From Antechinus flavipes (taxonomy: Eukaryota), in assembly GCF_016432865.1 (NCBI RefSeq), contig NC_067400.1, positions 619,876,001 through 619,940,000 on the forward strand: DNA of 64,000 nt, read 5' to 3'. Under the pieces are notes generated by a model that had not been told where the DNA came from, searched no databases, and saw only the letters and a list, made by a program, of their open reading frames with translations. Positions 31,238-51,121 of the stretch are shown here, piece by piece. Numbering within the stretch: position 1 is the stretch's first letter; each line of letters begins with the position of its first letter. The position numbers and the translations under genes were made by a program.

Positions 31238-34200
31238 ATGGCTAAACTGGCCAAGCTGCGTTGCAACTTCATCTCCACCATCCCGGCATTGCTTTTCATC
31301 AAAAGTATCACCATCCTGGGCGTCATCTTCTTTAACCCCTCCTGGGCTTTCTTCTATAACTATGAATACGAGGCCTTGGTGATGGCCAACCCATGGGTCA
31401 TATGCGTGAGGAAGCAGTGTAAGGTCATCAAGCACATCGGTAAGGCCCCGACCCCGCCTCGCCTCCCGCGCTGCGCTCTGGGCTTCCTTCTCCCCCCAGT
31501 CCCAACCTGTGACCTCGGGGGTATGACCCCTCTCCTCCCCTCTCCCCCGTGTGTCAGCCATCTCTGGGCCCGGACTCTTTAACTAGTGACGGATGTGGTC
31601 CAGCTTTCAACATCGCCCCTGGGATGGGTGACTGGGAACCTGCAGCACCAGGCGGCGTGGGATGAGTGCTAGTCCCTGCCCTTCCAAACGGCGCTTCCCC
31701 TTTCCTACCTGACACTAGTGGCTGGACGCCTGATCAATAACTCCTCGCTCCTGCTTCCTAACCTCTGACCCCCTTCCCTTCCAGCATCCCCGAACCTGAT
31801 CCCTCGGTCGGGCCCCCCTCATCAACTCCCACCATCCCCTTTGGTTTTACTCAGTAAGATTAACCTTTATCTCTTCCCTAACCCTAGTTGATCCTCATCA
31901 ACTCTGGGCAAAGAACAGACCAGGATTTAACCTTTTGGCAACCTGGCTTGTGTGTAAAAGGTAGAGAGACTTGGAGGACAATTCAATTCAATTCCACAGA
32001 CATTTATGGAGGGCTTGTGGTCTACAGGGCCTTACGCTCAGCGCTAGGGAAGCAAACAAAATGAAACCAAAAAACCATCTCGTGACAAATGGTCAAACAG
32101 CACGTCTACAGCCGATGCTCCCATTTTGACCGAGTTGGTTTAACTCTGCCCAATCATTCTAGAGTTCTCAGCGTGCATTTAGTAAACATTTACTATGTGT
32201 CAGGGATTTCTGGGAATATAAAGAAAGGGGAAAAATCCAGCCCCTGTCCTTAGGATTTCACCACCCGTAGCCAACCTAGGGGTGAGATCCTCAGAACTTA
32301 GTAAGAGATCATTAGATGAATCATCATGATGATTATTCTTGTTATGTTGACAATATTGATATAATTAAGAGGTATTCATTATATTTCTATTATTCTAGTG
32401 AATTAGCATTGATGAGTAATCATATAATTAATACTTAACTAGTTGTTTTATTGATATATTAATTATATTGGTATGTTTGTACTTGATATAATTAACGTAT
32501 TATGTCAATAATAGCTCACATTGATGTAGTGTTTTAAGGTATCCAAAGTGCTTTCCACATATGATCTCGTTCATTCTCAAAACATGAGATCTGGGGGATC
32601 GAGAGGTTATTTTTATTCCCATTTTACAGATGAGAAATGTCTGAGGCAAGTTTCCAATTCAGTTCTTCCTAACTCCAAGACTTTCCACTCTAACCACCAA
32701 TTGAGAGCTTTTATTTTTTCACTTGAGTCTTTTGAGGAACCCTGGGTTATCTCCTTGCCATGACTAGGTTGAAATCTAAATGAGGGAAGCAAACATTGAT
32801 TAAGCACCTACTATGTGCCAGGCACTATGCTTAGTGCTTTCCGAGTATTATCTCATTTGATTTTCACAACAACTTTGAAGGGAATTGTCATTATTATCCC
32901 CCATTTTATAGTTGGGAAAACTTAAGGCTGAAAGAGGTTAAGTGACTTGTCAGCACAAAGTCACACAGCTTTCAGTGGTTCATATATCCATATTGGTTAT
33001 GTTTGTGAGAGAAAACACAGATCGAAAAACATAAAACATAAAAAACTAAAGCGAAAAATAGTTTGCTTTGTTCTGCACACACAAGTTCTTATTCTGGATG
33101 TGTATAGCATTTTTCACTATGAATATGTTTTGGCTCATTGTTTTGCTGAGAAAAGCTAAGTCAATTATAGTTAGTCATCACACAGAGTTACTGTTACTAT
33201 GTACAATGTTCTCTTAGTTTTGCTTAATTCACTTTGTATGAGTTCATCTAAGTTTTCCTAGGTTTTTCTGAAATCATCTCATTCACCATTTCTTATAGCA
33301 GAATAATATTCCATTACAAACATACATCAAAACTTGTTCAGCCATTACCCAAATTACAATTCTTTGTTACCACAAAAAGAGCTTCTATACATTTTTTGTA
33401 TAAATTGGTTCTTTTCCCTTTAAAAAATATGTTTGGGGAATATGAATAAACATTTTGCAAAGAAGAAATTAAAGCCATTTCTTGTCATGTGAAAAAGTAT
33501 TCTAAATCACTTTTGATTAGAGAAATGCAAATTAAAACAACTCTGATCTATCACTTCACACCTTTCAAATTGGCTAAAGAAAAGGTCATGATAAAAGTTG
33601 GAGGGGATGTCAGAAAATTGAGACACTAATGCATTGTTGGTGGAATTGTGAAAGGATACAATCATTCTGAAGAGCAATTTGGAGCTCTCCAAAGGGCTTT
33701 AAAACTCAAAGGTCTATAAAACTGGGCATACCCTTTGACCCAGCAGTGTCATTACTGGGTCTGTATCCCAAGGAAATCATAAAAGAGGGATGTGCAAGGA
33801 TGAATGTTGAAAATTATCTTTGAATGTATTTGGAAAAACAAAATAATATTTATTTTATTTTTACAAAATAATATTTAAAAATATCTTTCACATATAGAAT
33901 TTATATTGCTATTTCTGGTCAAAGGACATGCACAATTTTATAGTCCTTTGCTCCTAGTTCCAAATTGCTCTTCAGAATAGTTGGATCAGTTCACAATTCT
34001 ACCAATGGAGTATTAGTGTTCCAATTTTCCTACATGCCCTCCAATATTTGTCAGTTTGTTTTTCTGTCACATCAGTCAACCTGATAGATGTGAGGTACTT
34101 GGAGTTGTTTTAACATATATTTTTCTAATCATCATTGATTTGGATTTCTTCCTCTGAAAACTGCCTGTTTGTATCATTTGACCACATATCATTTGAGGAA

Positions 34201-36119
34201 TGACTTATTTTCTTATATATTTGATTCTGTTCCATTAAATATTTGAGCAACGAGGCCTATATCAGAGACATTTGCTATAAATTCCCCCTCACCTCCGGCT
34301 TTCAGCTTTTCTTCTAATTTTGGCTGTACTGATTTTGTTTGTGCAAACCCTTTAAATTTAATATTAAAATTATTCATTTTACATCTCATAATTCTATCTC
34401 TTGTTTAGTAATAAGTTCTTTCCTTGTCCATAGATCTGATAAACTATTCCATGCTCCCCTGATTTTCCTATGATCTCACTCTTTCTATCTAAGCCCTGTA
34501 CCAATTTTGACCTTATCTTGGGACACGGTGTAACATGTTAGTCTATACCTAGTTTCTGTCAAATTATTTAACAATTTTCCCTGAATTTTATCGAATAGAG
34601 AATTCTTGTCCCCAAAGCTTGGATCTTTCTGTTTTTCAAATACTACATTATTGTGATCATTGACTACTGTGTATTCTATACCTGATCTATGCCACTGATT
34701 CACCACTCTATGATTATTAGTATGGATAGGACATCTTCTTTCACATTTCCCCCCATTAATTTTCTTGATATTCTTCACCTTTTGTTCTTCCAGATGAATT
34801 TTATTATGTAGTTCAATTGGCATGGCACTGTATACATAATTTAATTTGAGTAAAATTGTTATTTTTATTATACTGGCTCAACCCATCCATAAGCTATTTT
34901 TTTCTGATTGTTTAGATCTGATTTTATCTGTGTGAAAAGTACTCTGTAATTGTGTTTTTATAGTCCCTGGATTTATCTTAGCATGTAGATATCCAAGTAT
35001 TTTATATTGTCTACTGTTAAGGGACAGATCAGTTCTCCAAGAGCCTCCACAGCTGTGGATCATAGCATCTGAAGGAGTCACAGGGCAGCCTTTGCTGACA
35101 CAGGTGTTGCAGATTGGGAATGAGATAAATTGGAGGCAGAGGGAAGAGGAGAGAGGTCAGCCATTGTCAGGTGGCTTCCGTGTATTCCAACAGTTCTTCC
35201 GTGTATTCGAACAGTCTACCTCTATTTAAAATGGAATTTCTCTTTGTATTTCTTGCTGATGGACTCTGTTGTCAATATGAAGACATGCTGATGTTCATTT
35301 ATGTGAGTTTTCTTTATATCCTGAAACTTGGCAAAGTTGTTAATTATTTCAACTAGTTTTTTAGTTGATTATTAAGTTTACCATCATATCATTTGCAAAG
35401 AGTCATAGTTTTGTTTGTTCACTGCCTATTTTAATTCCTTCATTTATAGTAACAATACATTTATAGTAACAATATTGAATAATTGTGGGAATAATGGGTA
35501 TCCTTACTTCAATCCTGCTCTTATTGAGAAGTCTTTCTAGCTTATCCCCATTACAGGTAATACTTGCTGGTTTTAGATATATGTTACTTTAAAGAAGATC
35601 CATTAGTTCATATGATCTCTAGGGTTTTTTTTTAATAGCAATGGGAGTTATATTTTGTCTAAAACTTTTGCATCTCTTGAGATGATCACATAATTGCTAT
35701 TGGTTTTGTTATTGATATAGTCACCTATGCTGATAGTTTTTCTAATATTGAATCAGCCCCGAATTCCTGGCATAAATCCTATCAGGTCATAATGTATGAT
35801 TCTTGTGATATTTTGCTGTAATTCCTTGGCTACCAATTTATTTAAAAATTTTTTTGCAGCAATCTTCATTAGGGAAATTGGTCTATAGTTTTCTTTCTCT
35901 GTTTTGGCTCTTTGGGGCTTAAGTATTTTTAGTTCCATGTTTGTATTTTTAAAATAATTTGATAGGCGCCTTCTTTGCCTATTTTTATTTTTTTCCAAAG
36001 ATTCTCTTTTTGGTTACATTTTAAGTTCTGAACTACCTGTTTCCTTTCCCACTTCATACTAGAGAAAGCTACCATTTGGCACGCACATTATATATAAATA
36101 TAAAAAGATAGCTAGAGGG

Positions 36120-36173
<54 letters not shown>

Positions 36174-39100
36174 CCTGTTCAGAGGACTTCTTAAAAAAAA
36201 AAACATTCTATGCATGCTTCTATTTATTAGCTCCTTCTCTGGAGTGAATAGCATCTTTTTTCATAGATCCTTTGTGGTTCATTTGAGTATTATAATATGC
36301 ACCATAGCTTAGTAATTCATAAACTTTTTTTGAACAATATTGCTGTTATTGTATACAATTTTCTCTTGGGTTCTGCTCATTTCACTCTTCATTATTTCAT
36401 GCAAATCTTTCCGTGTTTTTTTCTAAAATCAACTTACTCATTAGTTCTTACAGTACAGTAATACTCCATCATAATCACCTACACCACAACTTGGTTAGCC
36501 ATTGTCCAATTGATCAATGTCACCCCAATTTCCAGGTCTTTACTACCACAAAGAAAGCTACTATAAATATTTCAGAATATGTAAGTTCTTGCCCTTTTTC
36601 TCTAGTCACCTTGGGAAGCAGAGCTAAAATAGTATTGCTGGGTCAAAGGGTATACATGGCTTTATAATTCTTTGGAATTCAGATTCCTCTTCAAAATGGT
36701 TACATCACTTTACGGTTCCACCAACAGTGGATTAATGCCCTAATTTTTTCCCATCTCCCCAAAAATTTCTCATTTTCCCCTTCTAGCATTTTAGCCAAAC
36801 TGATAGGTTGTGAGATAATATCTTAAAGTTGTTTTATTTTGCATTTCTCTAATCAATCATTCAGAGCATTTAAAATTATTCTATATAATTTTGTTATTTT
36901 TATAAAGATAACACAAAGATTTATCACATTCTTTAAGCATTTATCAATTGGAGAACAACTTGCATTTGTATAAATTCGACAAAGTCCTTTATATATTTGA
37001 GTTGATTCTGCTCCCCATTGGCACATGGAGTGTGTGCACATTTATAGACAATACAAAATTCAGAAGACCCGAAAGAACAGCTCTTTGTTGTGAGAGGATT
37101 CAACAGGTATCGCTTCCAAATGGCAGGCTGGAGGAAAACCAAGCTGGCAAACGAAGACCAGTTTACTGAAGGAGGAGCTGGATATATGTTTTTCTGGAGT
37201 GGCCACAGCAAAAAGGAGCATGATTTTGCTTTTTAGAGTCATATTCAGCTCTATTCCAGTATTTCTTTTGGACTAACCAATTATTAATGACAATCTTAGA
37301 CATAGGGAATACATTTCCATGTATAAAATGGTTTGCCCTTATTGAGCCCCTTGAAATTAGTCTTTGATATTAGCTCTAATATATCAAATTTTCTACTGAG
37401 TTCAGGTTTGTTTGCAACAAAATCCTGAAAATCTGTTCCTTTTTTTCATTGAATATTATACTTAATTTTGCTGGACATAATTCAGCTGCAACTCTAGTTC
37501 TTTTGATTGTTGATATATAGTATTTCAGGACTTGAAGTCTTTTATTGTAGCCACTGGTAAGTCTTATAGGATTCTAATTATATGTCCAGTATATTTGAAT
37601 TTTTTATTGCTTGTAAAATCTTATCTTTGATCTGGAGGCTTTCTAAATTTAGCAATGATATTCTGTATGTTTTCCTTGTTTTCCTATCTTTGAGGTAACG
37701 ATTGTTTTTTTTTTCCTATTTCTACTTTCCCCTCTTGTTCTATCACTTCAAGATAATTCTCTTGAATTTTTTCTTGTATGATTGTTTCAAGATTCTTTTT
37801 TGTTTGGTCATAACTTGTAGGTGGTAGTCCAATTATTTTTTTCTCCTCTTGATAGCTTCTCTAGATGCGTTGTTTTTCTTATGAGATGCCCTACATTTCT
37901 ATTTTTTCATTATTTATATATATTTTTAATCATTTCCTGATCTGTCATAACTTCATAGTTTTCTCCTTGTCCAATTCAAATTTTTGAAGAATCATTTTCT
38001 TCTTAGAAATCATGGGTCTCCATTTCTAGTTGATTGACTTTTCATAATCTTCTTGGATTATTATAGTTTTTCCTTAATGTCTCTCATTTGATTTAAAAGT
38101 CTTTTTTGAATTCTTCTTTGGATAGATAACTATTTAATGTTACTCTTTGGGATTGGAGAGGCTTGTTTTTTACTTCTTTGTCCTCTTTTGAAGATGAATC
38201 CTTGTCTTCTTTACTCTCAGAATAACTTTCTGTAGTTGGGTTCTTTCTCCTTTGCCTGCTCATTTAAAAAAAAAAAAAGATAGCTTGTTAGTGTAATCAT
38301 TTCTAGTCCTGGGGTGAAGAGTGGGGATGGTGCTTCTGGCTTCAGGTGTTCCTTCAATTCAGCCCTTTGGCTTGGAATCCAAAACCAAGAACTCTACCCT
38401 CTTGTAAGTATCCCTGCCCCTACTATGACTCCATTCATCAGGCATGTGCTCAGCCCTTCTCACCCAGAGCCTATTCCTTATCAGCAGAGGTTCTTCAATC
38501 TTCCCAGACTCTGACCTGCAACTCCCCACATTGTCTGGGAGATGAAAGTTCCTGTGGTTTTGGCTGCTTCAGCCAAACTTGCTTGCTGTTTCAGCAGAAC
38601 TACATGGAGATATTTACTTGTTTGGTGAAGTTCACTTGTACATCCAAATGGTCCTGATGCTTCTTTTTTTCTTGGAAATTCATTTATGATCTATTCAATT
38701 TATTTTTCTAAAATAGGTTTGTTTGCATATTCTATTTTCTCTTGTGTTAATCTAAATGGTTTATCATTTTCATAAGTATTTTTTCATTTTACTTTAAATG
38801 TTTATAACTGGACAAAGCAACAATTGCTTTGATGTCACCTTTATTAGTGGTATAGTCCACCTTTTCATTCTTGATACTAGAGATTTGGTTTCTTTCTCTT
38901 TTTAAATCCTATTAACCAATGGTTTATTTTATAAAACTTATTTCTACTTTTATTTATTCAATGATTTTTATACTCATTTTTATTAATTTCACTTTTGATT
39001 TTTATGATTTGCAATTTGGTTTAGTTGGGGATTTTACTTTGTCCTTTTTTCTTAAAAAATTTTTTTTATATCTAATTTTTTTGAACTTTTTTAAAATGTT

Positions 39101-42100
39101 GCACATATAACTTGGTCTACTCTTTTTACATTTTATTGATGTAATCATTTAGAGATATGTTTTCCTCTGATTAGTGCTTTTGTTGCATTCCATTGGTTTT
39201 GCTATTTTGTCTCATTTTCCTTATTGTTTCTATGACTTGTTCATTTTTTTAATTGAAGCTTTCTCTTTTCAAAACAGATGCAAGGATAATTTTTAATCAT
39301 CAACCCTTTCAAAACCTTGTGTTCTAATTCCCCCTCCCCTTCCACCCTCTCCTCTAGATGGCAAATAACCCAATATATGTTAAACATGGTAAAACTATAT
39401 GTAAATTAGGGCACCTAGATAGTGAAGTAGATAGAGGACCAGCCTTGAAATCTCCTAACTTGAGTTCAAGTCTGCCTTGACTTGAACTTGACCTTGAAGT
39501 TAAGTGTCGCTTAACACTTCCTAGCTATGTGACTCTGGTAAGTAACTTAACCCCAATTGCCTCAGGGGAGAAAAAAAAATATATATGTAAATCTAATATA
39601 GGCAAATATTTATACAATTATCTTCCTGCACAAGAAAAATCAGATTAAAAAAATGAGAAAAAAATTCACCAACCCTTTATCCAGTTGATAAATGGTCAAA
39701 GGATATGAATTTTGAGATGAAGAAATTAAAAATATTTCTAATCATATGAGAAGGTGTTCCAAATCACTATTGATCAGAGAAATGCAAATTAAGACAACTC
39801 TGAGATACCACTACACACCTCTCAGATTGGCTAAGATGATGAATGTTGGAGGGGATGCGGGAAAACGGGGACACTGATGCATTGTTGGTGGAGTTGTGAA
39901 GTGATCCAACCATTGTGGAGAGCGATTTAGAATTATGCCCAAAAAGTTATCAAACTTTGATCCAGCAGTGTTAATACTGGGCTTATACCCCAAAGAGATA
40001 CTAAAGAAGGGAAAGGGACCTGTATGTGCCAAAATGTTTGTGGTGGCCCTGTTTGTAGTGGCTAGAAACTGAAAACTGAGTGGATGCTCATTCAGGTAGA
40101 GAATGGCTGGATAAATTGTGGTATATGAATATTATGGAATTTTATTGTTCTGTAAGAAATGACCAGCAGGATGATTTCAGAGAGGTCTGGAGAGACTTAC
40201 ATGAACTGATGCTGAGGGAAATGAGCAGAACCAGGAGATCATTGTACATGGCAACAGTTAAGATTACATGATGATCAATTCTAATGAATGTGGCTCTTTC
40301 CAACAATGAGATGATTGATGCCAGTTCCAATGGTCTTTGTGATGGAGAGAGCCATGTGTGCCCAGAGAGAGGACTTTGGGAACTGAATGTGGATCCCAAC
40401 ATAGCATTCACACTCTTTTTGTTGTTCACGTGCATTTTGTTTTCTTACTCATTGACTTTGTATGACCTGATTTCTCTTGTGCAGCAAGAGAATTGTATAA
40501 ATATGCTTATTATATTGCATTTAACGTATATTTCAACATGTTTAATATATATTAAATTACTTGCCATCTAAGGAAGGGGGGGGGAGGAGGAGGAAATGTG
40601 AAACACAAGGCTATGCAAGGGTCAATGTTGTCAAATTATCCATGCATATATTTTGAAAATAAAAAAAGCTTTATATATAAAACAAAAAGACTCAAGCAAA
40701 CAACAACAAAAGAAGTGCAAATGCCAGTTGAGCCATACTCGGTCCTCACAGTCCTCTCTCTGGGTGTAGATCACAAAGTCTTTGGAACTGGCCTGAATAA
40801 TCTCATTGTTGAGAAGGGCCAGGTATGATTTCTTCTTTAATCCACTCATTCTTTCAGATTAGTTCAGTCCCCCATTAATTTCAATGTATTTTCACGATTT
40901 CTTATTTTATTGCATCATCTGGAACGGACGCATTTACTATTTGATTAACATTTTATTGATGTAAGGATTTAGAGATATACGTTTTCCTGTGATTACTGCT
41001 TTTGTTACATTCCAGGTTTTGTCTGATTCTTTTTTTTTTTTTTTTAAATCATTTTAATGATTGTTTTTACAAGTTGTTCTTTAGCCCCTTCATTCTTTCA
41101 GATGAGCTAAGTTAGTCCCCATTCACTTTCCGATTAGTTTAGTCCCCAATTAATTTGAATGTTTCCATGGTTTCTTCTTATTTTATTGCATTATGATCCG
41201 GAAAGGCTGCGGGGAATATTTCTGCTTTTCTGCACTTAATGATAAGGTTTTGAACGTCCTAATAGACGGCCAATTTTTGTAAAGCTCCCATACGTGTTCC
41301 TTGCTCCATTCAGTTTTCTCCAGAGATCTAGCATTCTAACTTTTCCACAATTCTCTTCACCTCCTTATTTTGTTGAAGGCTGTCTGGCTCTGAGAGGAGA
41401 AAGTTGAGGTCTCTCACTAGCAGAGTTTTACTTTTCCCCCCGGGGAACTCATTTTACTTTTAAAACAGCAATTCTTCTTTCTGGACTCTCTCCTCCTGCC
41501 TCCGAACTTTCCCCTCCTTTTCATGCCGTTTTCACCTCCAAAAGCGCAGCCTCCAATGCGGCCCCTGGCCCACCCCTGCTCCCTTTCGTCTCGGGTCCCC
41601 CCCCTTCTCCCTCCTCCCGGGCCCCGGCCCCCCCTCCTGAGGCTCTCTCCGCCTGCCGCCTTCCCCTCCCGTCCAGGACAAGCCGAAGCCTGTCGCGTGT
41701 GTCTGGTGGTATCCCTGGTCCTGTCTATGCCTCTGGGCATAAGCGTGCTGGCCCACATCTTGGGACTGCTGTCCAGCTCGCTGCCAGAGACCATGCCCTT
41801 CTTCACGAGCATCCTTTGTCTGGCAAACGGTGCGTCCCGGGCCCGGGGAGACGGGCTCCGGGAGTCCTGGGGGATGTGGGCGGAGCCGCGGCCCCCTCCC
41901 TTTCCTCGCCCCCCTTCTCTGCCAGGTTGCTTGCAGCCCGGCACCTCCACACCCAAGCCCCTCCCGAGCCCGTGTCACCCACCCCGCTACCCCTCCCGAG
42001 CCCGTGCCACCCACCCCGCTGCCCCTCCCGAGCCCGTGCCACCCACCCCGCTGCCCCCCCCCGAGCCCGTGTCACCCACCGCGTTGCCCCCCCCAGCCCG

Positions 42101-44070
42101 TGCCACCCACCGCGCTGCCCCCCCCCGAGCCCGTGTCACCCACCCCGCTGCCCCCCCCGTCCTGACTTCCCACCCCGCTGCCCCTCCCGAGCCCGTGTCA
42201 CCCACCCCGCTGCCCCCCCAGCCTGTGCCACCCACCCCGCTGCCCCTCCCGAGCCCGTGTCACCCACCCCGCTGCCCCCCCAGCCCGTGCCACCCACCCC
42301 GCTGCCCCCCCCCGAGCCCGTGCCACCCACCCCGCTGCCCCTCCCGAGCCCCTACCACCCACCCCGCTGCCCCTCCCGAGCCCCTACCACCCACCCCGCT
42401 GCCCCCCCGGTCCTGACTTCCCACCCCGCCGCTCCGCAGGTTTGGTCAAGTTTCTCGCCTTCATATTCTTCCACCTCCTGTTGACTCAGCTCAAGTTCCT
42501 CCTTCGGCTGTTCGATATGTGGCTCAGCTGGCCCTCCTACTTGCTCCTGACGTCCTCGGTGATCTACATCGTGGTCGGTGCGGCCGGGGAGCGAGCGCCG
42601 GAGCCGGGGAAGAAGGGGAGGGACGCGGATGGGTCAGGAGAAGAGGGGAAGGGGAATGGAGGAGGAGAAGCGGCCGAGGGAGGAGGAAAAAGGGAAGGCG
42701 AGCTTGTTGAGGCAGAGAAAAGGAAGATTTCCAATGGCAGGAGACCCCTGTGGAGGAGGGGACCACGGAGAAAAGGGGAGGCTGGCAAAGGGAGTGGAGA
42801 AGGTAAAGGGGATGAATGAGGAGGAATGAAAGGGAAGGCCATGAAGTGGGAGAAGCTGTAGAAAGATGGAAGAATGAGAGGTGTGAAGCCTTTGACTCAG
42901 GCTGCTGTTGGGAGGTAGGGAAGACTACCTACATGGGATATAAAGGGAGAAAGGAGGCAGCTGGGGGGCCCAGTGGATAGAGCACCTGCCCTGAAATCAG
43001 GAGGATCTGAGTTCAAATCGGGCCTCAGACACTGAACTCTTCCTAGCTGGGTGACCCTGGACAAGTCACTTAACCCCAACTGCCTCAGCAAATAAATAAA
43101 GGGAGGGAGGAGGGAGCTGTCAGAGAAAGAATAAGCAGGAGGAAGTAGCGAAGGAGGGTAGAAGGGATAGTGTAAACCATGCAGAGGCAGCTAAGGGGCA
43201 ACTGAAGTGAAAGGGTCCTGAGTTCAGATTTCACCCATCACTTTTAAACAGGTTGGGGAAGCCATTCAACTTGTTTCCTTGTCTGTAAAATGGGGATAAC
43301 AGCACTCCCTCCCAGCGTTCTGAGGATCAAATAAGATATTTGTAAACTGCTTTACAAACCTTTTAGTACTATGTAAATGCCATTATATAGGGCAGAAGGC
43401 AGCAAAAAAAAAAAAAAAAAAGGGGGGGGGACAGCGTATTGAGGCAACGGTTTTGAGAGTATAGACTGGGGTGGAAGAAGCAGGCAGGTAATATTGGTGG
43501 AGAGGAAGAGAGATGGACAGGGAATATAATGACCACAATGAATGCAAGTAGATCTTGGGGTGGAGCACCGAGGCCAGGGCAAGAAAATAAAGGAAACGAG
43601 TTGCCTTCTTCTCCTGGGGAGTACAACTGGGACCTCTCTTTTCCCTAGGGTCCATCATCTTCCATTATCACCTTCATCTCCTCACTTCCCAGAAAAAGCC
43701 TTTAGAGAAGCTGGTGATTTCCGAAAACACAATCGTCACGAAGAGTTTGAAAAATTTCTTAGCCTCCAGAATGACTGAAAAATCTGTCGGCACAAAGACC
43801 AAAACCACCCTCACCAGAGGTCTTGATGTCTTCTTGCACCCAAAGTTCAAAAGAACTCGACCTTCAAGTCTCAGGAAGTCCCACTTCTTTAAAAGAGTTT
43901 CTATTGCCAAGCTGTCTAACAGATCCTGGAGCTCTGAGCAGCCTTGGGTCTCCCAAAACCTTAAAACCTCTTCATATCCCATGGGCTTTAAGGTTCAGCC
44001 AATCATTATGAATCCCCTTCCCTCTGTGATTTCCGATGTTCCAAGTACTTCAAGTCACACAAAACTCTAA
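31238..44070 (+). CDS. Unnamed PMP22/EMP/claudin-family tetraspan gene A, 304 aa (306 from ATG 31232); exons 31238-31439, 41677-41829, 42440-42577, 43649-44070
   Basis: All three introns are GT-AG phase 1 and the frame is open throughout (915 nt). There are four hydrophobic segments, an ECL1 W...NPWxxCxxxxC motif, WLSWPSY before TM4, and a long basic tail. Candidate ATTAAA at 44392-44397. Joining exon 1 to exon 2 across 10.2 kb is inference. Confidence 0.8.
33000..38200 (-). mobile_element. Mosaic of LINE-1 fragments (mostly minus strand; a plus-strand piece at ~33480-33830) in gene A intron 1
   Basis: ORF 35753..35998 reads [20 protein letters not shown]...[12 protein letters not shown], matching L1 ORF2. 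Other T-rich antisense L1 segments are present. Confidence 0.75.
36120..36168. repeat. (TG)n microsatellite
   Basis: Directly visible. Confidence 0.95.
39408..39565 (+). mobile_element. WSINE1-like SINE
   Basis: gggcacctagatagtgaagtagatagagga...gagttcaa...gtgactctggtaagtaacttaaccccaattgcctc. Confidence 0.75.
39660..40690 (+). mobile_element. LINE-1 3' portion (ORF2 C-terminus, 3' UTR, A-tail)
   Basis: [19 protein letters not shown]...[16 protein letters not shown] and [20 protein letters not shown]; terminal aaataaaaaaagc. Confidence 0.9.
41955..42430. repeat. CpG-rich ~32-bp minisatellite (ccgagcccgtgtcacccaccccgctgcccctc) filling most of gene A intron 2
   Basis: Directly visible tandem copies. 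It explains the Pro-rich ORFs at 41523-42484. Confidence 0.95.
42953..43090 (+). mobile_element. WSINE1-like SINE
   Basis: ggcagctgggggcccagtggatagagcacctgccctgaaatcaggagg...gagttcaaatc...accccaactgcctc. Confidence 0.85.
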
Positions 44071-45096
44071 AGTCTTGCTCCCAAGAGCTCAGACACTTCT
44101 CCTCGTTGCTCTCTCCCCACGGTCACAATTCTCCTCCTGGAGGAGTCCTCCGCGGATCCTGATGCTGCTGGAGGTGTCTAACCTTTGTCCTTTCCCTCAT
44201 AACTCCCCTCTCAAGCTCGAGCCAAGATTTGCCCTCTGTGAGATCCATCTCTGGCCCTGTTGAGGACCTGGTGTAGACAGGAGCCTGGATATGTATGGAC
44301 TGTGGGGAAGCCAGATGGAGCAGAAAATGAAGATGTGTGAAGACAGAAGGATAAAAAAGAGATGAATGTCTATTTCCTACATTGTGTTGTCATTAAAGAA
44401 AGCCTGAGACTTCCTCCCGAACCAGTGTTCCACCATCTCCGTTATGTTTCCTGACTCCATCTCTAACTCCGCTCCCCACCTGTATCCCTCCTCCATCACA
44501 TCCCTATCTTTAAGCCCAGTCCCAGTTTGATCATTAACTCCAACCTGATGTCCACCCCCACTCTCTCCTCTAACCCATATTCTTATCTTTCCCCTCATGT
44601 CTAACTCCCATTCCACTATCCTCCCCAAGCCATAGCCAACTCACCACACCCCCAAATTCATGCCTATTTCCTACTGTTAGCTCCATTTCTAACTCCGAGC
44701 CCCACATAACCCCCCATCCTCTGCGGTACACTGGGGTGGGGGTGGTGATGTCAGCCTTGGGTATCTTGGAAGGTTCTGTGACAGTTGAGGCCCTGGAGGG
44801 AGTGGGGAAGGTCAGAAAAGCCTGGAAGGGGGAGCACAACTGTTGTACCTGAGGAGAAATCTGAGGGGACAAGGAGGGACCTGAAGGGATAAGAAGAGAT
44901 CAAGACTTGGGAAGGAGCTAAAGAGATGGGAGATAACTATGGCAGAAATAAAAGAAACTGAAGACAAATATTAGGGCCTGGATAAAGAGAGGAAGCAAAA
45001 CCGGATAAGGGCAGACCGATGGATAGTCCGGGCTCCCGGTCCTGGGCTGGGTTTTGCCTGCCTTGTACCCAGGAGCCTCTCAGCCTTTAGTGGAAA

Positions 45097-46372
45097 ATGA
45101 AGAAAAAGGGTTCATTAAACCAAAAAGACGAATTGGTGCCCTTCAAAATGGCCCTGAACATCCTTTGCCTTATACTTCTCCTCCTCACCGTGTTCTTGCC
45201 CTACTGGCTGAAGATACAAAAGTCTCAACAAGAGTGTATCCACGTGGGCATATGGAAATCCTGTGGGAATCACATATGTGAGAACCTTGTGAAGTCAGGT
45301 ACATGGGGACAGGGAGAAGAATGGAGGGCAGGAAGTGGGGATGAGGATTTCGAAGGAGGTAGGGAAGAGGGATGGGGTCAAGAATAAAGAGAGAATAAAG
45401 ATGGGGCTGAAGGTTGGACCAAGATGGAGGGTAGAGACTGAAGGTGGAGATGGGAATAAAGACAGAGAAGGGGAGTCAAAAGGACCCTTGGGCTTACAGG
45501 ATGTGTGTTCCGTTAGTCTGAGAAAGTTTCTTTCTGTGGGTGAGCAAATAGACACAGGAAGCTGATTGTGGGGACTTAAGGGGTGTGTGTGTGTGAATGT
45601 GAGTGTCTAAGAGTGTGTGTGTGTGTGCAAGAGTGTGTGTGAGCGTGTGAGTGTATGGCCATTGCCATCACTCCCTCTCTCCAGTCTTAATTAAGGCAGT
45701 TCAAGTGCTGATGGGCTCAGCCATTGTAACTGGCATCTTGGCTCTTGTGAACATTTTCCTGCTGCTGATCAATGTAGTGAATGATAGGACCTCCTTCTTC
45801 CTTTCCTCTGCCCTGTGCAGCTTTGTCACTGGTAAGATTCGGGGCCTCAGGGTCTTGGTCACGAGGTGCTGGGAGGCCGATCGCGTGCTGGTTCTGGGGC
45901 GGTGACCGCATCCGATTCTCCCCGCAGCCTTACTGGGCCTTTTTGGTCAAAGCATCTTCATGGTGACCACCAGCACTTCAGCGTTGGGACGCGTTGATTT
46001 CCTTTATTTTGACTGGGCCTTCTACCTAGGCTGGGGCACTTACATCCTCTACCTCCTGAATGGTGAGCCGGTGATAGGGGCTGAAAAGGGCTGGGGACGA
46101 GGAACGGGATTGGGAAGGAAGCGGAGGATGGGAGTGGGCAGAAGATGGAGAGAGGATTGGAAAGGGCCACAAGGGTGAGTTTGGAGACGGGTGTGGGAAT
46201 GGGGCTGGGCTGGGCGTGGAGGGGGTCTGGAGATGGGGATGAGAATGGAAACTTAGAGGCCTTCTTTCTCAAAGGGTCCCTGATACTGGTGAGGAAGCAC
46301 TCCACCAGGGTGAAGCCAGCAAAGCAATCTAGAGTCATGTCGATACAAGAGTGCAAGTCGGTGGCCGTGTGA
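45097..46372 (+). CDS. Unnamed PMP22/EMP/claudin-family tetraspan gene B, 193 aa; exons 45097-45298, 45685-45831, 45928-46062, 46275-46372
   Basis: All introns are GT-AG phase 1 with a clean 582-nt ORF. The claudin-like ECL1 reads W...GIWKSCGNHIC, and FDWAFYLGW precedes TM4. AATAAA at 46671-46676. Confidence 0.9.
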
Positions 46373-46413
46373 AGACAGCCCAGCTCCCTTGTCCTGGGAT
46401 GGACCTCCTGCAG

Positions 46414-46414
<1 letters not shown>

Positions 46415-46467
<53 letters not shown>
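46415..46467. repeat. (TG)n microsatellite in gene B 3' UTR
   Basis: Directly visible between the stop (46372) and AATAAA (46671). Confidence 0.95.
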
Positions 46468-46470
<3 letters not shown>

Positions 46471-47565
46471 GCCTCTGGGGCTCTTGAGTTTGTCTCCATT
46501 CTAACAATATTTTGCCTCCAGGACCCCTTCTTCCTCATTGCCATTCTTCCCAAGAACCCGCTGGCCTGTTTCTGTGCATGGTGGGAAGGGAAGAAGGAAA
46601 AGAAGTGGCCTGAAACAGTCTCCAAGCCCCACTGGGGATCTGGTTTTCCAGCTAAGAAATCATTTATATAAATAAAACCAGTGAATAGCCATGTCCACGG
46701 ACAGTCTAACCAGTTGTGTCTTTGGGAAACAAAATGAACCTTTCATGGTTATCCTGGATGTTTCAGCTCAGGTCAGGTCCCAAAGCTTCCCAATCCCCTT
46801 GGGGTCAAGGTGTCTATCCCACAATGCCTTTGGCCCCCAGATCCTAGCCCCCCATTGTCGTGGGCTTCTCTGTGCCAAACCCTTTTGGGGACCCCAAGTG
46901 TCTGCCTCCAACCTCCCTTCACTTAAGGGACCTCGGCATCTAGTCAGCCCATCCCCTCCCCAGGACAGAAAGGAAAGGGGTCCGTGAGTCAGTTCTGCCG
47001 AGCCTCTGCTGTTACCAGCCACATCCCCTCCTACCCACATCCTGGCCAAAAGGCCATTGTTTGAAAGCTGCTCGTGCTTCCTTCGGGGAGCCTCCTTGCC
47101 TTTCAGGGAACAGGAGGGAGAGGCCTCTCCCCTCAACTCCTGACCTTCAGTACCTGGAGGGATGGGCCATACCTACCTGCCTTTTGCCTCACCCCGCCCC
47201 CACCAGCCCCAGACAGAGTGAAGTTTGGGGGAAGGAGCATAAAGATGATCTGAGTCATCAATCTGGTGTGAAAGCCCCCACCGCTTCCCCTTCCGGGGCC
47301 CAGGCTTGGATCCCCCAACCTCCTGCTGGCTTGGCCAGGTCTCAGTCCCCTCCTCGCCTCCTGAAACCCAAGCATTTGGTCTCCGATCCTCCGACTTCTC
47401 GGGTCCCAGCTCCCGGCCCCCCGACCTCCCAGGAATTCGGGCCGTCATCCCAAATCTTTATTGTCCGAAGTCCCTTTTCTTCTCTGACTTTGGCTGCCTG
47501 AGGCCCCGGGCCCCTGCCCCCTTGTGAGAATAAGGCGCCTCCGGTTCCTGAGGACCAGGTGAAGG

Positions 47566-48451
47566 ATGCGGCTCTGCGGGGTGCTCGCCCTGCTCTCCGG
47601 GAGTCTTGCTCTGGCCCTGCTGCTGGTCGCCCTGAGCACTGATAACTGGATCGCTTCCGTAGGCCGTAATCACCAGGCTCACTCCGGCCTGTGGCATCCC
47701 GACGGGGAGTCTGTGAAAGGTAAGAGGGGCGGCAGCCTCTGGGCCTTGGGCCTGGCTGCCTGGGAACACGGGCTGAGATGCTCCAACCCCCGTTGCAGAT
47801 TTCATCCTGGCCACCAGAGTCTTCACTATCCTGGCTGCACTGGGGGGTCTGCTGTCCATCTGCTGTCTGATCCTCCTCCTCACTCCATCCCTCTGCAACC
47901 CCAGCTTCAGCCACCTGGCCTCTCTGATTTTTTGCATCACAGCCTTTGCTGCAGGTGAGGTGGCAGGGGGGGGGAGAGGGAGAAGAGGGGGAGGGGAGAA
48001 CTGGCAGGTTGGGATGGGAGGAAAGGGCCTCACAGCTCCCATCCACAGTCCTCTGCAGCACAGTGGGAATGGCGATTTACACTGGAGAGCGATGTAAAGA
48101 GTCGGGTTATTCCCAGATTCAGACGACCTTTGCCTGGTCCTTCTACATGGGATGGATTTCTGTCGTCTTCTTCCTTTTCACTGGTGAGTGGGAGACGTGA
48201 GATATGGGGAATGGGTGGAGGACCGGAGGCCTCCCATCCCAGGAAGAGGGGGAGACTGGGCAGAGCGGCCTCTGAAGGGAAGCCTCGGATCGGGAGGATG
48301 GGGGAAGGGTGCACGAGGCGGCATGGGGGGGCCGCTGGGGAGATCGGCATGGGGAACTTCCTCTGAAACCCGCCTCTCTGCCACAACAGGGGTCCTGAGC
48401 CTTGTGGTGCACTGGAGTGCTCCCCGGCCCAACTACGAGATAACTGCTTGA
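47566..48451 (+). CDS. NKG7: Natural killer cell granule protein 7, 168 aa; exons 47566-47719, 47799-47954, 48049-48183, 48390-48451
   Basis: MRLCGVLALLSGSL...ALSTDNW...AHSGLW, QIQTTFAWSFYMGW and PRPNYE match human NKG7. Introns are phase 1 GT-AG. AATAAA at 48474-48479. Confidence 0.95.
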
Positions 48452-49489
48452 GAATCCAGTCCTAGATTCAATGAATAAACCCAAAGTTGCTCATTGGATT
48501 GATGTGTGTCTCATTACTCCCAACCCTAACCCTGACTGTACGCTCTGCCTGGATGCTTGGGTCTCGGAATCCGTCATGTCTCAATCTTTTCGCTCTTCAA
48601 TCGTTTTCCCCCTCTCCCAGCCACATATCCTTTCCCACTCTCCTTGACTCCTTGTCTCCCCAGAACACTACTTTAGGATTCACAAGTACCTTCCCTCCCT
48701 CCTTTTTCTCTGCTCCATGTCCTGCTCTTTACTTCCAACCAGTTTCCCAATCTCCCTTTCTCCCTTTCTCCCAATACTCCATAGGTCTCGGGGTCTTCTC
48801 TTCCCAATCTCCCCTTGTCCCTCTCTCCCAATACTCCATAGGTCTCTGTCTTCTCCCCCATCGTCTTCCTGAATCCCCTCCTTTCTCTCCCCCCCCCCTT
48901 CCTTTCTCTGGGTCTTTCCCATCCTCCCATTCTGCTGCTCCTCCCCTCCCAATTTTTCCCCTACTCCTGCCCTTAGACTATCCTCTGTTGCCCTCCTCCT
49001 GCCTTTACTTTTGTCCTCCACGACCCCAGACGTCTCCTTAAGTCCCCCATCGATCACTGAGCCGAGAGGGCTCCCTCTCCTCATGGAAAATACCGTGTGT
49101 GTGTCTTTAATGAGGTATAGGGGAGGTTCTGGAATTCCTTCCTCATAGAGACCCCGGCCCCCTCCCCCACTCAGCCTCCATCTCCCCAGCCCGGGCGGGA
49201 GGTGCTGGAGCCGTGTGGGGCTTCCCTCAAATGAAGGGACTCGTCCTGAGGAGCAGGCTAGCGGAGCTAGGCGGGAGCCTCGCAGGTGGGGAGCTCCCCT
49301 CGGACGGCAGGCTGTGGGGGCTGGGCCAGGTGGGAGCCGGGCAGAGGGGGGCCCGGGATGTGGAGAGGATTCCCTTCCGAGGGAAGGGCTCCGAGGTGAT
49401 CCGGGGAAGAAGGGAGCGGGGGACAAGGGCCCCTTTCCACGCCTGGAGTCCCAGTCCTGCCGCGCCCCCTTGCCTGCAGCGGCCCCTGG

Positions 49490-51121
49490 ATGGGGGTGAA
49501 GCGAAGCCTGCAGAGCGCCGGCCTGTGCCTGGGCATCTTGGCCAACGTCCTGGTCGTGCTGGCCACCTCCACCGACTTCTGGAGCCGCTTCTCCGATGGC
49601 CACAACGGGCTGTGGAGACTCTGTCGAAGAAGGAACTGTACCAACTCCCCCTGCGAGAGTGAGGGCCACTCCGCCCCGCCCCTCCCCCAGGGGCCCAGAA
49701 CTGGGGGTCCCCCGACCTGCCGGCCCAGGGCCCGGTTTCCTGAACCGTTACCACGCAGGCTGGTCTCCCACGTCCCTTCCAACAGCAAATAGTTGCTTCA
49801 GTTGCTCCACATCCTCACCACCAGGTCCCCGCCTGTTACGGCGGAGGCTGGGGACGGGCCCGGCTATCACGCGGCCTCCTTTCCTCCTCGTAGCCTCTTA
49901 GGCACAAAGCGGGACCGAGGGCCCCTCTGGGGTGGGGCGGGGCCCAGGAGGGGTTTCTGCGGCCACCTCCACTCTCTCCTCTTTCCCCCAGCCATGCTGG
50001 CGGCCACGGCGGCCTGTGTGGTGTTGGCCGCTGGCGCGGGCCTCTTGGCCTCCATGCTGGGCGTTCGAGTCCTGCTCGCATCCAGGACCGGGAACCTTAT
50101 CCCCCCGCGGGGTCGGAACGCCTGCCTGGTGTTCTTCCTGAGCGGTGAGAGGCTCCCAGCCGACAGGGGGCGGGGCCGGGCCCAGAGGGCTGGGGAGGCC
50201 TAGGGAGGGGGGCTCAGGCCGGGGAGGCTAACTCCAGCCTCCCTTTTGAGAAGGCGCGAAGGGAAAGGGAGGCTCAGGTTAGATGAAGGCCCACCCGGGC
50301 TGACAAAGCCGGAGGCCGGCCGGGCCAGGAGCGCATCCTCAGAATGATGGATTAGGAGAGAACGGAGCTCGCTCTGCTAAAATGGGAGGCCGCGGGAGAG
50401 GGACCGACCCAGCCCGGGCCTAGGGAGGGGGCGGAGCCAGACCAAGAACATAAGAGAGGGGGCGGAGCCAGACCAAGCAAAGTAGGGGGGCCAGGGGACG
50501 GGCGGGGGCCGCAGCCGTCTGGAGCAGTCGCGGGGTGCCTCGGCCCCCCAGCTCCGCTCACGCAAGGGTCGGGGTGGGGGCAGCGCTGCTGCTGCTGGCA
50601 GGCATGGTGGGCTACACTGCGCGGGACGCGTGGAAGGCGGACAGCTTCTTCTCCTGGTCCTACTTCACCGCCTGGCTGGCCCTGCCCTTCTCCATCCTCG
50701 CAGGTAGCGAGGTCCAGGTGGAGACACGCCCTTCCACCCGCCTCAGGGACGCCCACTTTCCTCTCTTAGATTCACCAAGGCCCCTCCTCTCCCCTCCCCT
50801 CCCCCCCACTTCGGCTGCCAGGGACTCCCAGTCCTACTCTCCAGTCACTTAGATCGCTCCTCCAAAGACACGCAGTGCTAGAACTCCGACCCTGCATGGG
50901 ATTCCCCAGGATCCCTCCCTCCGAGTCACCCTCCCCAGCTGCCCACCTAGACCCGAGATCCTCAGCCCTCCCAGCCCCCTCCCCGGGACCCCCACCCTCA
51001 GGACCCTCCGTCGCCTTCCCACTGAGTGACCTATCCCCCTCCCCTAGGCTTCTGCTTCCTCTTCGCGGACATGATCCTGCAGAGCACAGACGCCATCAGC
51101 GGTTTCCCTGTGTGCTTGTGA
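49490..51121 (+). CDS. CLDND2: Claudin domain-containing 2, 171 aa; exons 49490-49658, 49992-50144, 50584-50703, 51048-51121
   Basis: MGVKRSLQS...GHNGLWRLC, FFSWSYFTAWLALPFSILAG and FCFLFADMILQSTDAISGFPVCL match human. AATAAA at 51143-51148. Confidence 0.96.

What the first reader, a model, noticed from the sequence alone, without database searches (positions are those of the whole stretch)
45097..46676. Novel tetraspan gene B between gene A and NKG7
Seen: a compact, complete gene with A at -3 of the ATG, canonical splice sites and AATAAA. The protein reads MKKKGSLNQKDELVPFKMALNILCLILLLLTVFLPYWLKIQKSQQECIHVGIWKSCGNHICENLVKS-VLIKAVQVLMGSAIV...-ALLGLFGQSIF...FDWAFYLGWGTYILYLLN-GSLILVRKHS...CKSVAV. 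It has the claudin W-GIW-C-C signature plus a third ECL1 Cys, and a hydrophobic V-A-V terminus compatible with class II PDZ binding. Exon 1 is 202 nt, the same as gene A. Inference: a functional unnamed family member, loosely TMEM202-like.
Basis: partly seen in the sequence, partly recalled or inferred. Interest (0 to 1): 0.8.

Follow-up and report, generated by a model that had tools for sequence, protein, structure and literature searches.

The report
Marsupial-only LIM2/NKG7-cluster tetraspan gene
This is a real, expressed four-exon gene for a small four-pass membrane protein, an extra and fast-evolving relative of LIM2, NKG7 and CLDND2 seen so far only in Australian marsupials; gene-prediction pipelines already list it in other species, mostly mislabelled as "NKG7".

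Summary
The gene model holds exactly as described. It has four coding exons (202/147/135/98 nt), GT-AG introns that are all phase 1, a 193-aa ORF and an AATAAA signal.

**Expression.** Spliced contigs from one public run of the same species reproduce all three introns to the base, so the gene is transcribed and spliced.

**Where it sits.** The window is from a dasyurid-like marsupial. The gene lies in the tandem array LIM2, gene A, gene B, NKG7, CLDND2, ETFB. All five tetraspan genes share the four-exon, phase-1 layout.

**Orthologues.** They are found in Tasmanian devil, tammar wallaby, koala and sugar glider. RefSeq calls them "NKG7 isoform X1-3", "uncharacterized protein", "NKG7-like" and "NKG7" (a chimera). 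They pass Pfam PMP22_Claudin. Nothing was found outside these marsupials, and no paper mentions it.

**Evolution.** It is unusually fast: dN/dS is about 1.2 against the devil, versus 0.48 for NKG7. The frame, splice sites, start, stop and poly(A) signal are nevertheless kept. Transmembrane helices change three times more slowly than loops and tails.

- The Cys motif is the MP20/CLDND2 type (W-x2-C-x4-C), not the classic claudin signature.
- The third Cys and the V-A-V terminus are species-private.
- No TMEM202 likeness was found.

The scan already followed up neighbouring gene A (s1-200953) on this same window.

The parts
44700..44883 (+). Putative core promoter of gene B
   Evidence: 93-95% identical to devil, against 79-91% further upstream. 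X16 has no RNA cover at 44700-44841 and cover begins at 44884. The promoter function is inferred.
44884..45096 (+). 5' leader (at least 213 nt) with three short uORFs (uATGs at 44926, 44939, 45019)
   Evidence: X16 contig 44884-45298 is continuous with exon 1. The leader is 94.8% identical to devil and the uATGs are conserved. A contig end does not prove a transcription start.
45097..45298 (+). Coding exon 1 (202 nt): Lys-rich N-terminus, TM1, and ECL1 with W37, G-I-W53, C56 and C61
   Evidence: Joint 45298|45685 in X16. Pfam PMP22_Claudin E=0.0011 on this exon alone.
45299..45684 (+). Intron 1 (386 nt, phase 1), containing an imperfect GT-rich repeat at 45583-45654
   Evidence: GT..AG joint skipping 386 nt in X16. 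Tandem repeat scan.
45685..45831 (+). Coding exon 2 (147 nt): TM2, the cytosolic turn V-N-D-R-T and the first half of TM3; the best conserved part
   Evidence: 78% identical to tammar and koala, against 48-59% for the other exons. Joints on both sides in X16.
45832..45927 (+). Intron 2 (96 nt, phase 1)
   Evidence: Joint 45831|45928 in X16.
45928..46062 (+). Coding exon 3 (135 nt, the same length as exon 3 of LIM2 and NKG7): rest of TM3, the hypervariable ECL2 and TM4
   Evidence: ECL2 has 1 of 15 residues invariant in four species.
46063..46274 (+). Intron 3 (212 nt, phase 1)
   Evidence: Joint 46062|46275 in X16. One X16 contig retains this intron.
46275..46372 (+). Coding exon 4 (98 nt including TGA at 46370-46372): end of TM4 and a basic cytosolic tail
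   Evidence: The stop is conserved in devil.
46373..46690 (+). 3' UTR with (TG)27 at 46415-46468 and AATAAA at 46671-46676
   Evidence: AATAAA is conserved in devil. An X16 contig runs on past it, so use of this site is not shown.

Best explanation
Gene B is an independent protein-coding gene. It is a lineage-restricted tandem paralogue inside the LIM2, NKG7, CLDND2 array, present at least since the common ancestor of dasyuromorph and diprotodont marsupials.

It encodes a 193-aa four-helix membrane protein of the PMP22/EMP/MP20/claudin fold with both ends in the cytosol. Its features are:
- a short ECL1 carrying the MP20-type W-x2-C-x4-C hairpin (C56/C61, the counterpart of the Cys46/Cys51 pair of lens MP20);
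- a conserved TM2, turn, TM3 core;
- a very variable ECL2;
- a basic tail.

The most likely way it works is inferred from its nearest relatives and not shown here. It would act as a small non-enzymatic membrane organiser or adhesion subunit. The helices would pack or oligomerise in the membrane. ECL1b and ECL2 would form the contact surface for a partner, and that surface is what evolves fastest. This pattern suits an immune or reproductive role.

Shown: gene structure, transcription and splicing, orthologues and synteny, family membership of the orthologues, and the pattern of constraint.
Inferred: topology details, the disulfide, the partner-binding role, and the cell type.
For: **Gene model and expression**
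- Exact four-exon ORF.
- All three introns confirmed by spliced contigs of a same-species run, with cover starting 213 nt upstream of the ATG and none at the end of gene A.

**Orthologues and synteny**
- Orthologues of 192-194 aa in devil, tammar and koala, plus exons 2-3 in sugar glider.
- Identical synteny LIM2, A, B, NKG7, CLDND2, ETFB in tammar and devil.
- B orthologues form their own clade (97/97), apart from NKG7 (99/95) and LIM2+CLDND2.

**Family and fold**
- Pfam PF00822 above its cut-off for the orthologues: 38.8, 37.2 and 32.1 bits against 26.7.
- ESM Atlas models (pTM 0.70) best match LIM2 (TM 0.78/0.86) and CLDND2 (0.73/0.83).
- Same four-exon, all-phase-1 layout as LIM2, NKG7, CLDND2 and gene A; exon 3 is 135 nt as in LIM2 and NKG7.
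- W-x2-C-x4-C is shared with LIM2, CLDND2 and gene A.
- In the solved MP20 structure this Cys pair sits in ECL1b, and ECL1b with ECL2 makes the trans contacts (PMC11947226).

**Constraint against devil**
- About 5.9 indels are expected in the CDS at the non-coding rate. One was seen, of 3 nt, giving P(no frameshift) = 0.013.
- No stop arose in 49 substitutions (P = 0.19). ATG context, all splice sites, TGA and AATAAA are conserved.
- dN is 0.044 in TM helices against 0.141 elsewhere, Fisher p = 0.0014.
- Four-species invariance is 62-82% in TM helices against 7% in ECL2.
Against: - Overall dN/dS against devil is 1.2 (39 non-synonymous to 10 synonymous changes). This cannot be told apart from neutral.
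- CDS identity (91.5%) equals intron identity (91.6%).
- A roughly 1% diverged relative shows 5 non-synonymous to 2 synonymous changes.
- There is no protein-level evidence.
- The tissue is unknown because the run is coded.
- Three uORFs precede the start.
- One X16 joint skips exon 2, and devil isoforms delete the ECL1 cysteines, so not every transcript encodes the full fold.
- The window's own full-length protein could not be scanned against Pfam as one piece. Exon 1 alone is below the cut-off.
- My AlphaFold run was poor, with pLDDT 49.7.
Confidence: 0.78

Rival explanations
1. It is a transcribed but functionally dispensable ORF: a duplicate drifting neutrally that has not yet been broken, so that the RNA and not the protein is what exists.
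For: - dN/dS is 1.2 against devil, and exon identity equals intron identity.
- 5 non-synonymous to 2 synonymous changes against the close relative.
- uORFs precede the start and an exon-skipping form exists.
Against: - The ORF is intact in the window species, its 1% relative, devil, tammar and koala.
- There is a deficit of frameshifting indels, P = 0.013.
- All splice sites and signals are conserved.
- TM helices are three times slower than loops, p = 0.0014.
- Conservation is uneven across orders: exon 2 is 78% identical against about 55% for the rest.
Confidence: 0.12
2. It is not a gene of its own but an upstream part of the NKG7 transcription unit, as the RefSeq names in devil and sugar glider imply. 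Read-through or chimeric transcripts would be the real products.
For: - One X16 contig runs unbroken from gene B's 3' UTR past the AATAAA. If collinear, it ends at the NKG7 exon 1 donor, near 47720 (an inference from contig length).
- The sugar-glider model joins A, B and NKG7 exons in frame.
- All introns are phase 1, so such chimeras stay in frame.
Against: - Gene B has its own conserved start, stop and AATAAA.
- NKG7 has its own ATG at 47566 and a complete four-exon ORF of 168 aa.
- Tammar and devil annotations keep B and a 164-169-aa NKG7 as separate genes.
- In X16 every joint leaving a gene B exon lands on another gene B exon, and no loose end was reported at the exon 3 donor.
- A contig across two genes does not show a single transcript.
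Confidence: 0.05
3. On origin only: gene B is not a marsupial invention but an old vertebrate or therian paralogue of LIM2, NKG7 and CLDND2 that eutherians lost.
For: - The stem leading to the B clade is long, 1.24 changes per site, comparable to the NKG7 stem of 0.99.
- B is about equally distant from NKG7, CLDND2 and LIM2, with Smith-Waterman z scores of 11.9, 13.1 and 10.8.
Against: - An exhaustive HMMER search with exon 1 over 1.84 billion representatives found no relative outside the marsupial cluster. The one exception is a gecko repeat artefact that resembles LIM2 as much as B.
- The profile search found only the same five marsupial proteins.
- Near-neutral protein evolution can by itself give a long stem.
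Confidence: 0.2

Closest known systems
LIM2 / MP20 (lens fiber membrane intrinsic protein), in this window at 25349-30642
   Same: - Same tandem array and the same four coding exons with phase-1 introns; exon 3 is 135 nt in both.
- Same W-x2-C-x4-C pair in ECL1.
- Best structural neighbour of the devil orthologue, TM 0.78/0.86.
- Best PDB sequence hit, 9cbv, at a weak E = 0.13.
   Different: - Identity is low: in the family alignment LIM2's best match to any row is 32%, and the Smith-Waterman z score against gene B is 10.8.
- B has a 20-residue Lys-rich N-terminus and a 27-residue basic tail.
- Judged by its branch lengths in the tree, LIM2 looks slowly evolving; B evolves at about the neutral rate.
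- Nothing suggests lens expression for B.
CLDND2 (claudin domain-containing 2), in this window at 49490-51121
   Same: - Neighbour in the array with the same exon plan.
- Same Cys spacing in ECL1.
- Highest pairwise z score with B, 13.1.
- Structural neighbour, TM 0.73/0.83.
   Different: - It forms a separate branch in the tree, grouping with LIM2.
- It has a third Cys after the pair and a different C-terminus.
- Its 171-aa size is the same in three marsupials.
NKG7 (the name RefSeq gives the devil, koala and glider models of gene B), true gene in this window at 47566-48451
   Same: - Immediate downstream neighbour with the same exon plan; exon 3 is 135 nt.
- Best single-exon profile hit to B, on the TM4 region, E = 0.0019.
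- Present in the same RNA run (an inference from contig length).
   Different: - B is not the NKG7 orthologue. NKG7 is a separate 168-aa gene next door and forms its own clade.
- NKG7 lacks the ECL1 cysteines.
- NKG7 evolves under more constraint, omega 0.48 against 1.2.
Gene A of this window (earlier finding s1-200953), 31238-44070
   Same: - Both have been found only in marsupials so far, and they are adjacent.
- Both have a 202-nt first coding exon, with W-x2-C-x4-C starting at residue 53.
- B is gene A's best match among the paralogues, z = 8.2.
   Different: - Gene A has a 10-kb first intron and a 140-residue tail.
- The called tammar and devil gene A products carry no recorded Pfam family.
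- Its place in the tree is unresolved because of a long branch of 2.8.
Classic claudins (for example claudin-19, PDB 3x29)
   Same: - Four-helix topology.
- A W...G-[LI]-W...C...C theme in ECL1.
- A weak profile hit, E = 0.81.
   Different: - The Cys spacing is 4, not 8-10, and ECL1 is about 30 residues rather than about 50.
- There is no conserved PDZ-binding C-terminus.
- There is no evidence of strand formation.

Membership tests
PMP-22/EMP/MP20/claudin superfamily (Pfam PF00822) | Profile score above Pfam's gathering cut-off (26.7 bits) | tested here: met
   The orthologues score 38.8 (tammar), 37.2 (koala) and 32.1 (devil X2) bits. The window protein is 83% identical to the devil protein. 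Its exon 1 alone scores 19.3 bits, E = 0.0011. The spliced window protein could not be submitted as one reference.
PMP-22/EMP/MP20/claudin superfamily (Pfam PF00822) | Four transmembrane helices in a compact bundle | tested here: met
   Hydropathy shows segments at about 21-37, 68-97 and 105-130, plus a weaker one at 146-166. The low-confidence AF2 model has four helices. ESM Atlas models (pTM 0.70) match PF00822 clusters at TM 0.73-0.81.
LIM2, NKG7, CLDND2 tandem cluster | Four coding exons with all introns in phase 1 at matching positions | tested here: met
   Exon lengths in nt are B 202/147/135/98, LIM2 175/150/135/62, NKG7 154/156/135/62, CLDND2 169/153/120/74 and A 202/153/138/422. All splice sites are GT-AG and all introns phase 1.
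LIM2, NKG7, CLDND2 tandem cluster | MP20-type ECL1 motif W-x2-C-x4-C | tested here: met
   The motif is present in B (residue 53), devil X1, tammar, koala, LIM2, CLDND2 and gene A. It is absent from NKG7. The MP20 Cys46/Cys51 pair is described in PMC11947226.
Classic claudins | Signature [GN]-L-W-x2-C-x(7,9)-[STDENQH]-C (PROSITE pattern recalled from memory) | tested here: not met
   The regex matches none of B, its orthologues or the cluster paralogues.
Classic claudins | Conserved C-terminal PDZ-binding motif | tested here: not met
   The termini are VAV, MST, TMS and TSS in the four species.
NKG7 orthologues (the RefSeq label) | Orthologous position and clade | tested here: not met
   The true NKG7 lies at 47566-48451, and at L001 12402-13309 in devil. 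The clades are separate and both well supported.
   No TMEM202 cluster is among the nearest Atlas clusters, by features or by structure. The exhaustive exon 1 search gave no hit outside the marsupial cluster. No TMEM202 reference sequence was on hand for a direct comparison.

The most novel reading that the evidence does not exclude
Genes B and A together mark a marsupial-specific expansion of the NKG7/LIM2 cluster. In this reading B is co-regulated with NKG7 in cytotoxic lymphocytes, and its extracellular loops are under diversifying selection. B would then be a new, fast-evolving immune tetraspan of the cytotoxic granule or synapse with no eutherian counterpart.
Probability: 0.15. Interest if true: 0.55.

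Novelty: new member of a known kind. Interest (0 to 1): 0.35.

Why it matters
**Annotation.** Gene B is not NKG7. In the devil, RefSeq's symbol "NKG7" points to this gene, and the sugar-glider "NKG7" model is a three-gene chimera. Marsupial expression studies that count "NKG7" may therefore be counting the wrong gene.

**Biology.** The LIM2, NKG7, CLDND2 array has three genes in eutherians. In Australian marsupials it has five. The extra members evolve at about the neutral amino-acid rate while keeping their frame and membrane core. This is a tidy case for studying how small tetraspan proteins diversify, and it is a candidate lineage-specific immune or reproductive membrane protein.

**Limits.** It is not a new kind of system. 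The fold, the family and the way it arose (tandem duplication) are all ordinary.

Tried and rejected
- **Pfam on single exons.** Only exon 1 gave weak claudin-family hits; exons 2-4 gave nothing useful.
- **AlphaFold2.** Run on the nine-row alignment, it gave pLDDT 49.7 and pTM 0.27. That is too poor to search with, so no fold search was run. The ESM Atlas models were used instead.
- **Contig look-ups.**
  - The devil X2 and X3 proteins are not on record.
  - The tammar and glider loci came without DNA, so codon analysis was limited to window against devil.
- **RNA-labelled runs X1-X13.** They hold 0.06 or less of the sampled words. This most likely reflects the microsatellite.
- **Gecko hit P0002.** It is a fourfold-repeated exon-1-like artefact, as similar to LIM2 (score 80) as to B (score 73). 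It is not a B orthologue.
- **PDZ class II terminus and third ECL1 Cys.** Both are rejected as species-private.
- **Classic claudin signature.** Rejected.
- **TMEM202 likeness.** No support.
- **Other features.**
  - There are no Rfam families in 44000-48600.
  - Stop-to-stop ORFs on the minus strand across 44800-46800 reach at most 132 aa; they were not pursued further.
- **Literature.** Searches for "NKG7-like", for NKG7 with Tasmanian devil, and for NKG7 with CLDND2 and LIM2 found nothing on this gene. One dunnart uterus paper lists "NKG7" only as an immune gene.
Full report
**1. The observation**

- The ATG is at 45097, with A at -3. An in-frame TAG lies three codons upstream.
- The four coding exons are 45097-45298, 45685-45831, 45928-46062 and 46275-46372, of 202, 147, 135 and 98 nt.
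- Every donor is GT, every acceptor AG, and every intron phase 1.
- The product is 193 aa. The TGA is at 46370-46372 and AATAAA at 46671-46676.
- Hydropathy gives hydrophobic segments at about residues 21-37, 68-97 and 105-130, and a weaker fourth at 146-166.

**2. Is it transcribed and spliced?**

One search for public runs and one laying of reads were allowed.

Run X16 is the same species: ten of ten pieces are 99% or more identical. Its contigs total only 73 Mb and it behaves as RNA. It has no cover in the middle of intron 1 (45339-45409) or in intron 2 (45836-45906). It carries GT..AG joints that, after the stated shifts, are exactly 45298|45685, 45831|45928 and 46062|46275. All three predicted introns are therefore confirmed.

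Cover starts at 44884, giving a leader of at least 213 nt, and is absent at 44700-44841. In that run the gene is therefore not a continuation of gene A.

X16 also shows three minor forms:
- an in-frame exon-2-skipping joint, 45298|45928;
- retention of intron 3;
- a contig that leaves the 3' UTR, passes the AATAAA and, judged by its length, would end at the NKG7 exon 1 donor.

Runs X14, X17 and X19 are DNA-like, being continuous through the introns. X17 and X19 belong to a relative about 1% diverged. In that relative the ORF is intact, with 7 coding changes of which 5 are non-synonymous.

The runs are coded, so the tissue is unknown.

**3. Where it sits**

A MAR1-type SINE at about 42960-43090 (a reading from knowledge) first pointed to a marsupial. 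The window is also 87-93% identical in DNA to the Tasmanian devil locus. That fits a dasyurid-like marsupial other than the devil.

I rebuilt the neighbouring genes:

| Gene | Window coordinates | Coding exon lengths (nt) | Protein |
|---|---|---|---|
| LIM2 | 25349-30642 | 175/150/135/62 | 173 aa |
| Gene A | 31238-44070 | 202/153/138/422 | 304 aa |
| Gene B | 45097-46372 | 202/147/135/98 | 193 aa |
| NKG7 | 47566-48451 | 154/156/135/62 | 168 aa |
| CLDND2 | 49490-51121 | 169/153/120/74 | 171 aa |

All five lie on the + strand and have four coding exons, GT-AG sites and phase-1 introns. The called genes at the tammar and devil loci show the same order, followed by ETFB and an Ig-domain gene.

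**4. Relatives**

An exhaustive HMMER search with exon 1 over 1.84 billion representatives found one true cluster, represented by P0001. The only other hit was a gecko protein made of four repeats of an exon-1-like unit. That unit resembles LIM2 as much as it resembles B.

Word-indexed searches with P0001 and with a family profile found only five 90% clusters. Their names and accessions come:

| Species | RefSeq accession | RefSeq name | Length |
|---|---|---|---|
| Devil | XP_031819149, XP_031819150, XP_031819151 | protein NKG7 isoform X1, X2, X3 | 192, 185, 180 aa |
| Tammar | XP_072463895 | uncharacterized protein | 194 aa |
| Koala | XP_020859172 | protein NKG7-like | 194 aa |
| Sugar glider | XP_068944973 | protein NKG7 | 268 aa |

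- The glider model is an in-frame chimera of gene A exons 2-3, gene B exons 2-3 and NKG7 exons 2-4.
- The devil X2 and X3 forms use cryptic T|GTGAGA donors at the two ECL1 Cys codons.
- The window protein is 83% identical to devil and 59-61% identical to tammar and koala.
- No opossum, monotreme or eutherian protein was found.
- No paper mentions the gene.

**5. Family membership**

The orthologues pass Pfam PMP22_Claudin at 38.8, 37.2 and 32.1 bits, against a cut-off of 26.7. The ESM Atlas holds models of the tammar and devil proteins at pTM 0.70. Their best structural neighbours are LIM2 (TM 0.78/0.86), CLDND2 (0.73/0.83) and other PF00822 clusters. The best PDB sequence hits are weak: LIM2 entry 9cbv at E = 0.13 and claudin-19 at E = 0.81.

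Among the window's paralogues, B is about equally far from the three named genes. The Smith-Waterman z scores are 11.9 for NKG7, 13.1 for CLDND2 and 10.8 for LIM2. B is gene A's best match, at z = 8.2.

In a small maximum-likelihood tree the B orthologues form a clade (97/97). It is separate from NKG7 (99/95) and from LIM2+CLDND2 (83/88). Gene A is unplaced.

The ECL1 motif is W-x2-C-x4-C. LIM2, CLDND2 and gene A share it, and NKG7 lacks it. The classic claudin signature is not met. In gene A and gene B the motif starts at the same residue, 53, and both have a 202-nt first exon. This suggests, but does not prove, that A and B are sister duplicates.

**6. Constraint**

Against the devil, the CDS is 91.5% identical and the introns 91.6%. 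Nei-Gojobori estimates give dN 0.094, dS 0.078 and omega 1.2 for gene B. For NKG7 they give dN 0.060, dS 0.125 and omega 0.48. The substitution pattern alone therefore does not differ from neutral.

Other measures do show constraint.
- **Indels.** Non-coding DNA in the same alignment has 42 indel events in 4149 bp. That predicts 5.9 events in the CDS. One was seen, of 3 nt, so P(no frameshift) = 0.013.
- **Stops.** No premature stop arose in 49 substitutions, P = 0.19.
- **Signals.** Start context, all six splice sites, the stop and AATAAA are conserved.
- **Helices against loops.** dN is 0.044 in the four helices and 0.141 outside them, Fisher p = 0.0014.
- **Four-species invariance.** It is 62-82% in the helices, 40% in ECL1, 7% in ECL2 and 33% in the tail.
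- **Across orders.** Exon 2 keeps 78% identity, against 48-59% for the other exons.
- **Compared with NKG7.** B exons 2-3 are 63% identical between the window and the glider. NKG7 exons 2-4 are 74% identical.
- **Upstream region.** The 400 bp upstream of the ATG are the best conserved non-coding DNA nearby, at 93-95%.

Together this fits a protein-coding gene whose membrane core is kept while its loops and tails change at or above the neutral rate.

**7. How it probably works**

This part is inference. The nearest characterised relative by fold is lens MP20. Its MicroED structure shows a four-helix bundle. In it, Cys46 and Cys51 lie close together in ECL1b, and ECL1b with ECL2 makes head-to-head contacts with the opposing membrane (PMC11947226).

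Gene B keeps the homologous Cys pair, C56 and C61, in all four species. It varies most in ECL2 and ECL1. I therefore read it as a small non-enzymatic membrane organiser or adhesion subunit whose extracellular face meets a fast-changing partner. The cell type is open. The continuity of RNA cover from B into NKG7 in X16 hints at a lymphoid sample, but no more than that.

**8.

- The third ECL1 Cys (C47) and the V-A-V terminus occur only in the window species. The other termini are MST, TMS and TSS. The PDZ idea is rejected.
- The first ATG is the likely start. The N-terminal M-K-K and the L-V-x-F-K motif are conserved, and the second Met (M18) is Val in tammar.
- TMEM202 likeness found no support.

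**9. Verdict**

This is a real, expressed, lineage-restricted and fast-evolving member of a known family. Pipelines already predict it, but it is misnamed and unstudied. The main practical result is the annotation correction. The main open questions are its tissue, its age, and whether the loops are under positive selection.

The earlier finding s1-200953, on gene A in the same window, agrees with this picture. I rebuilt its gene model for the comparison.

Noticed in passing
window 45298|45928 (run X16): A spliced contig skips exon 2 in frame. This would remove residues 68-116, that is TM2 and half of TM3. Other X16 contigs retain intron 3 (46034-46303) and the 3' part of intron 1 (45437-45711).
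   Followed up: no
window 46477 to about 47720: An X16 contig of 1279 nt starts after the (TG)27 in gene B's 3' UTR and passes the AATAAA. If collinear, it ends at the NKG7 exon 1 donor (47719|47720). RNA then covers the whole spacer between gene B and NKG7. Only the part up to 46800 was laid.
   Followed up: partly
L001 10001-11200 and 12402-13309 (devil): RefSeq gives the symbol and name NKG7 to the devil orthologue of gene B (XP_031819149 to XP_031819151), although the true 169-aa NKG7 is the next gene. The sugar-glider 'NKG7' (XP_068944973) is a chimera of gene A, gene B and NKG7 exons. It stays in frame because every intron of the cluster is phase 1.
   Followed up: yes
window 45262|45263 and 45277|45278; devil L001 exon 1: The devil isoforms X3 and X2 use cryptic T|GTGAGA donors at the two ECL1 Cys codons, which removes the Cys pair. 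The second such donor also exists in the window, but no joint from it was seen in X16.
   Followed up: partly
window 31238-31439 and 45097-45298: Gene A and gene B both have a 202-nt first coding exon, with W-x2-C-x4-C beginning at residue 53. B is gene A's best match among the paralogues. They may be sister duplicates.
   Followed up: partly
window 44926, 44939, 45019: There are three upstream ATGs in the RNA-supported leader. Their uORFs are 11, 11 and 23 codons long, and the last ends at the TAG six bases before the main ATG. All three are conserved in devil.
   Followed up: partly
window 46568: The window has G here, but all four runs laid read C, including the same-species runs X14 and X16. 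This is a private allele or a small assembly error in the 3' UTR.
   Followed up: no
window about 41940-42430: Gene A's intron 2 is filled with C-rich tandem units of about 35 nt. A MAR1-type SINE lies at about 42960-43090 in its intron 3.
   Followed up: no
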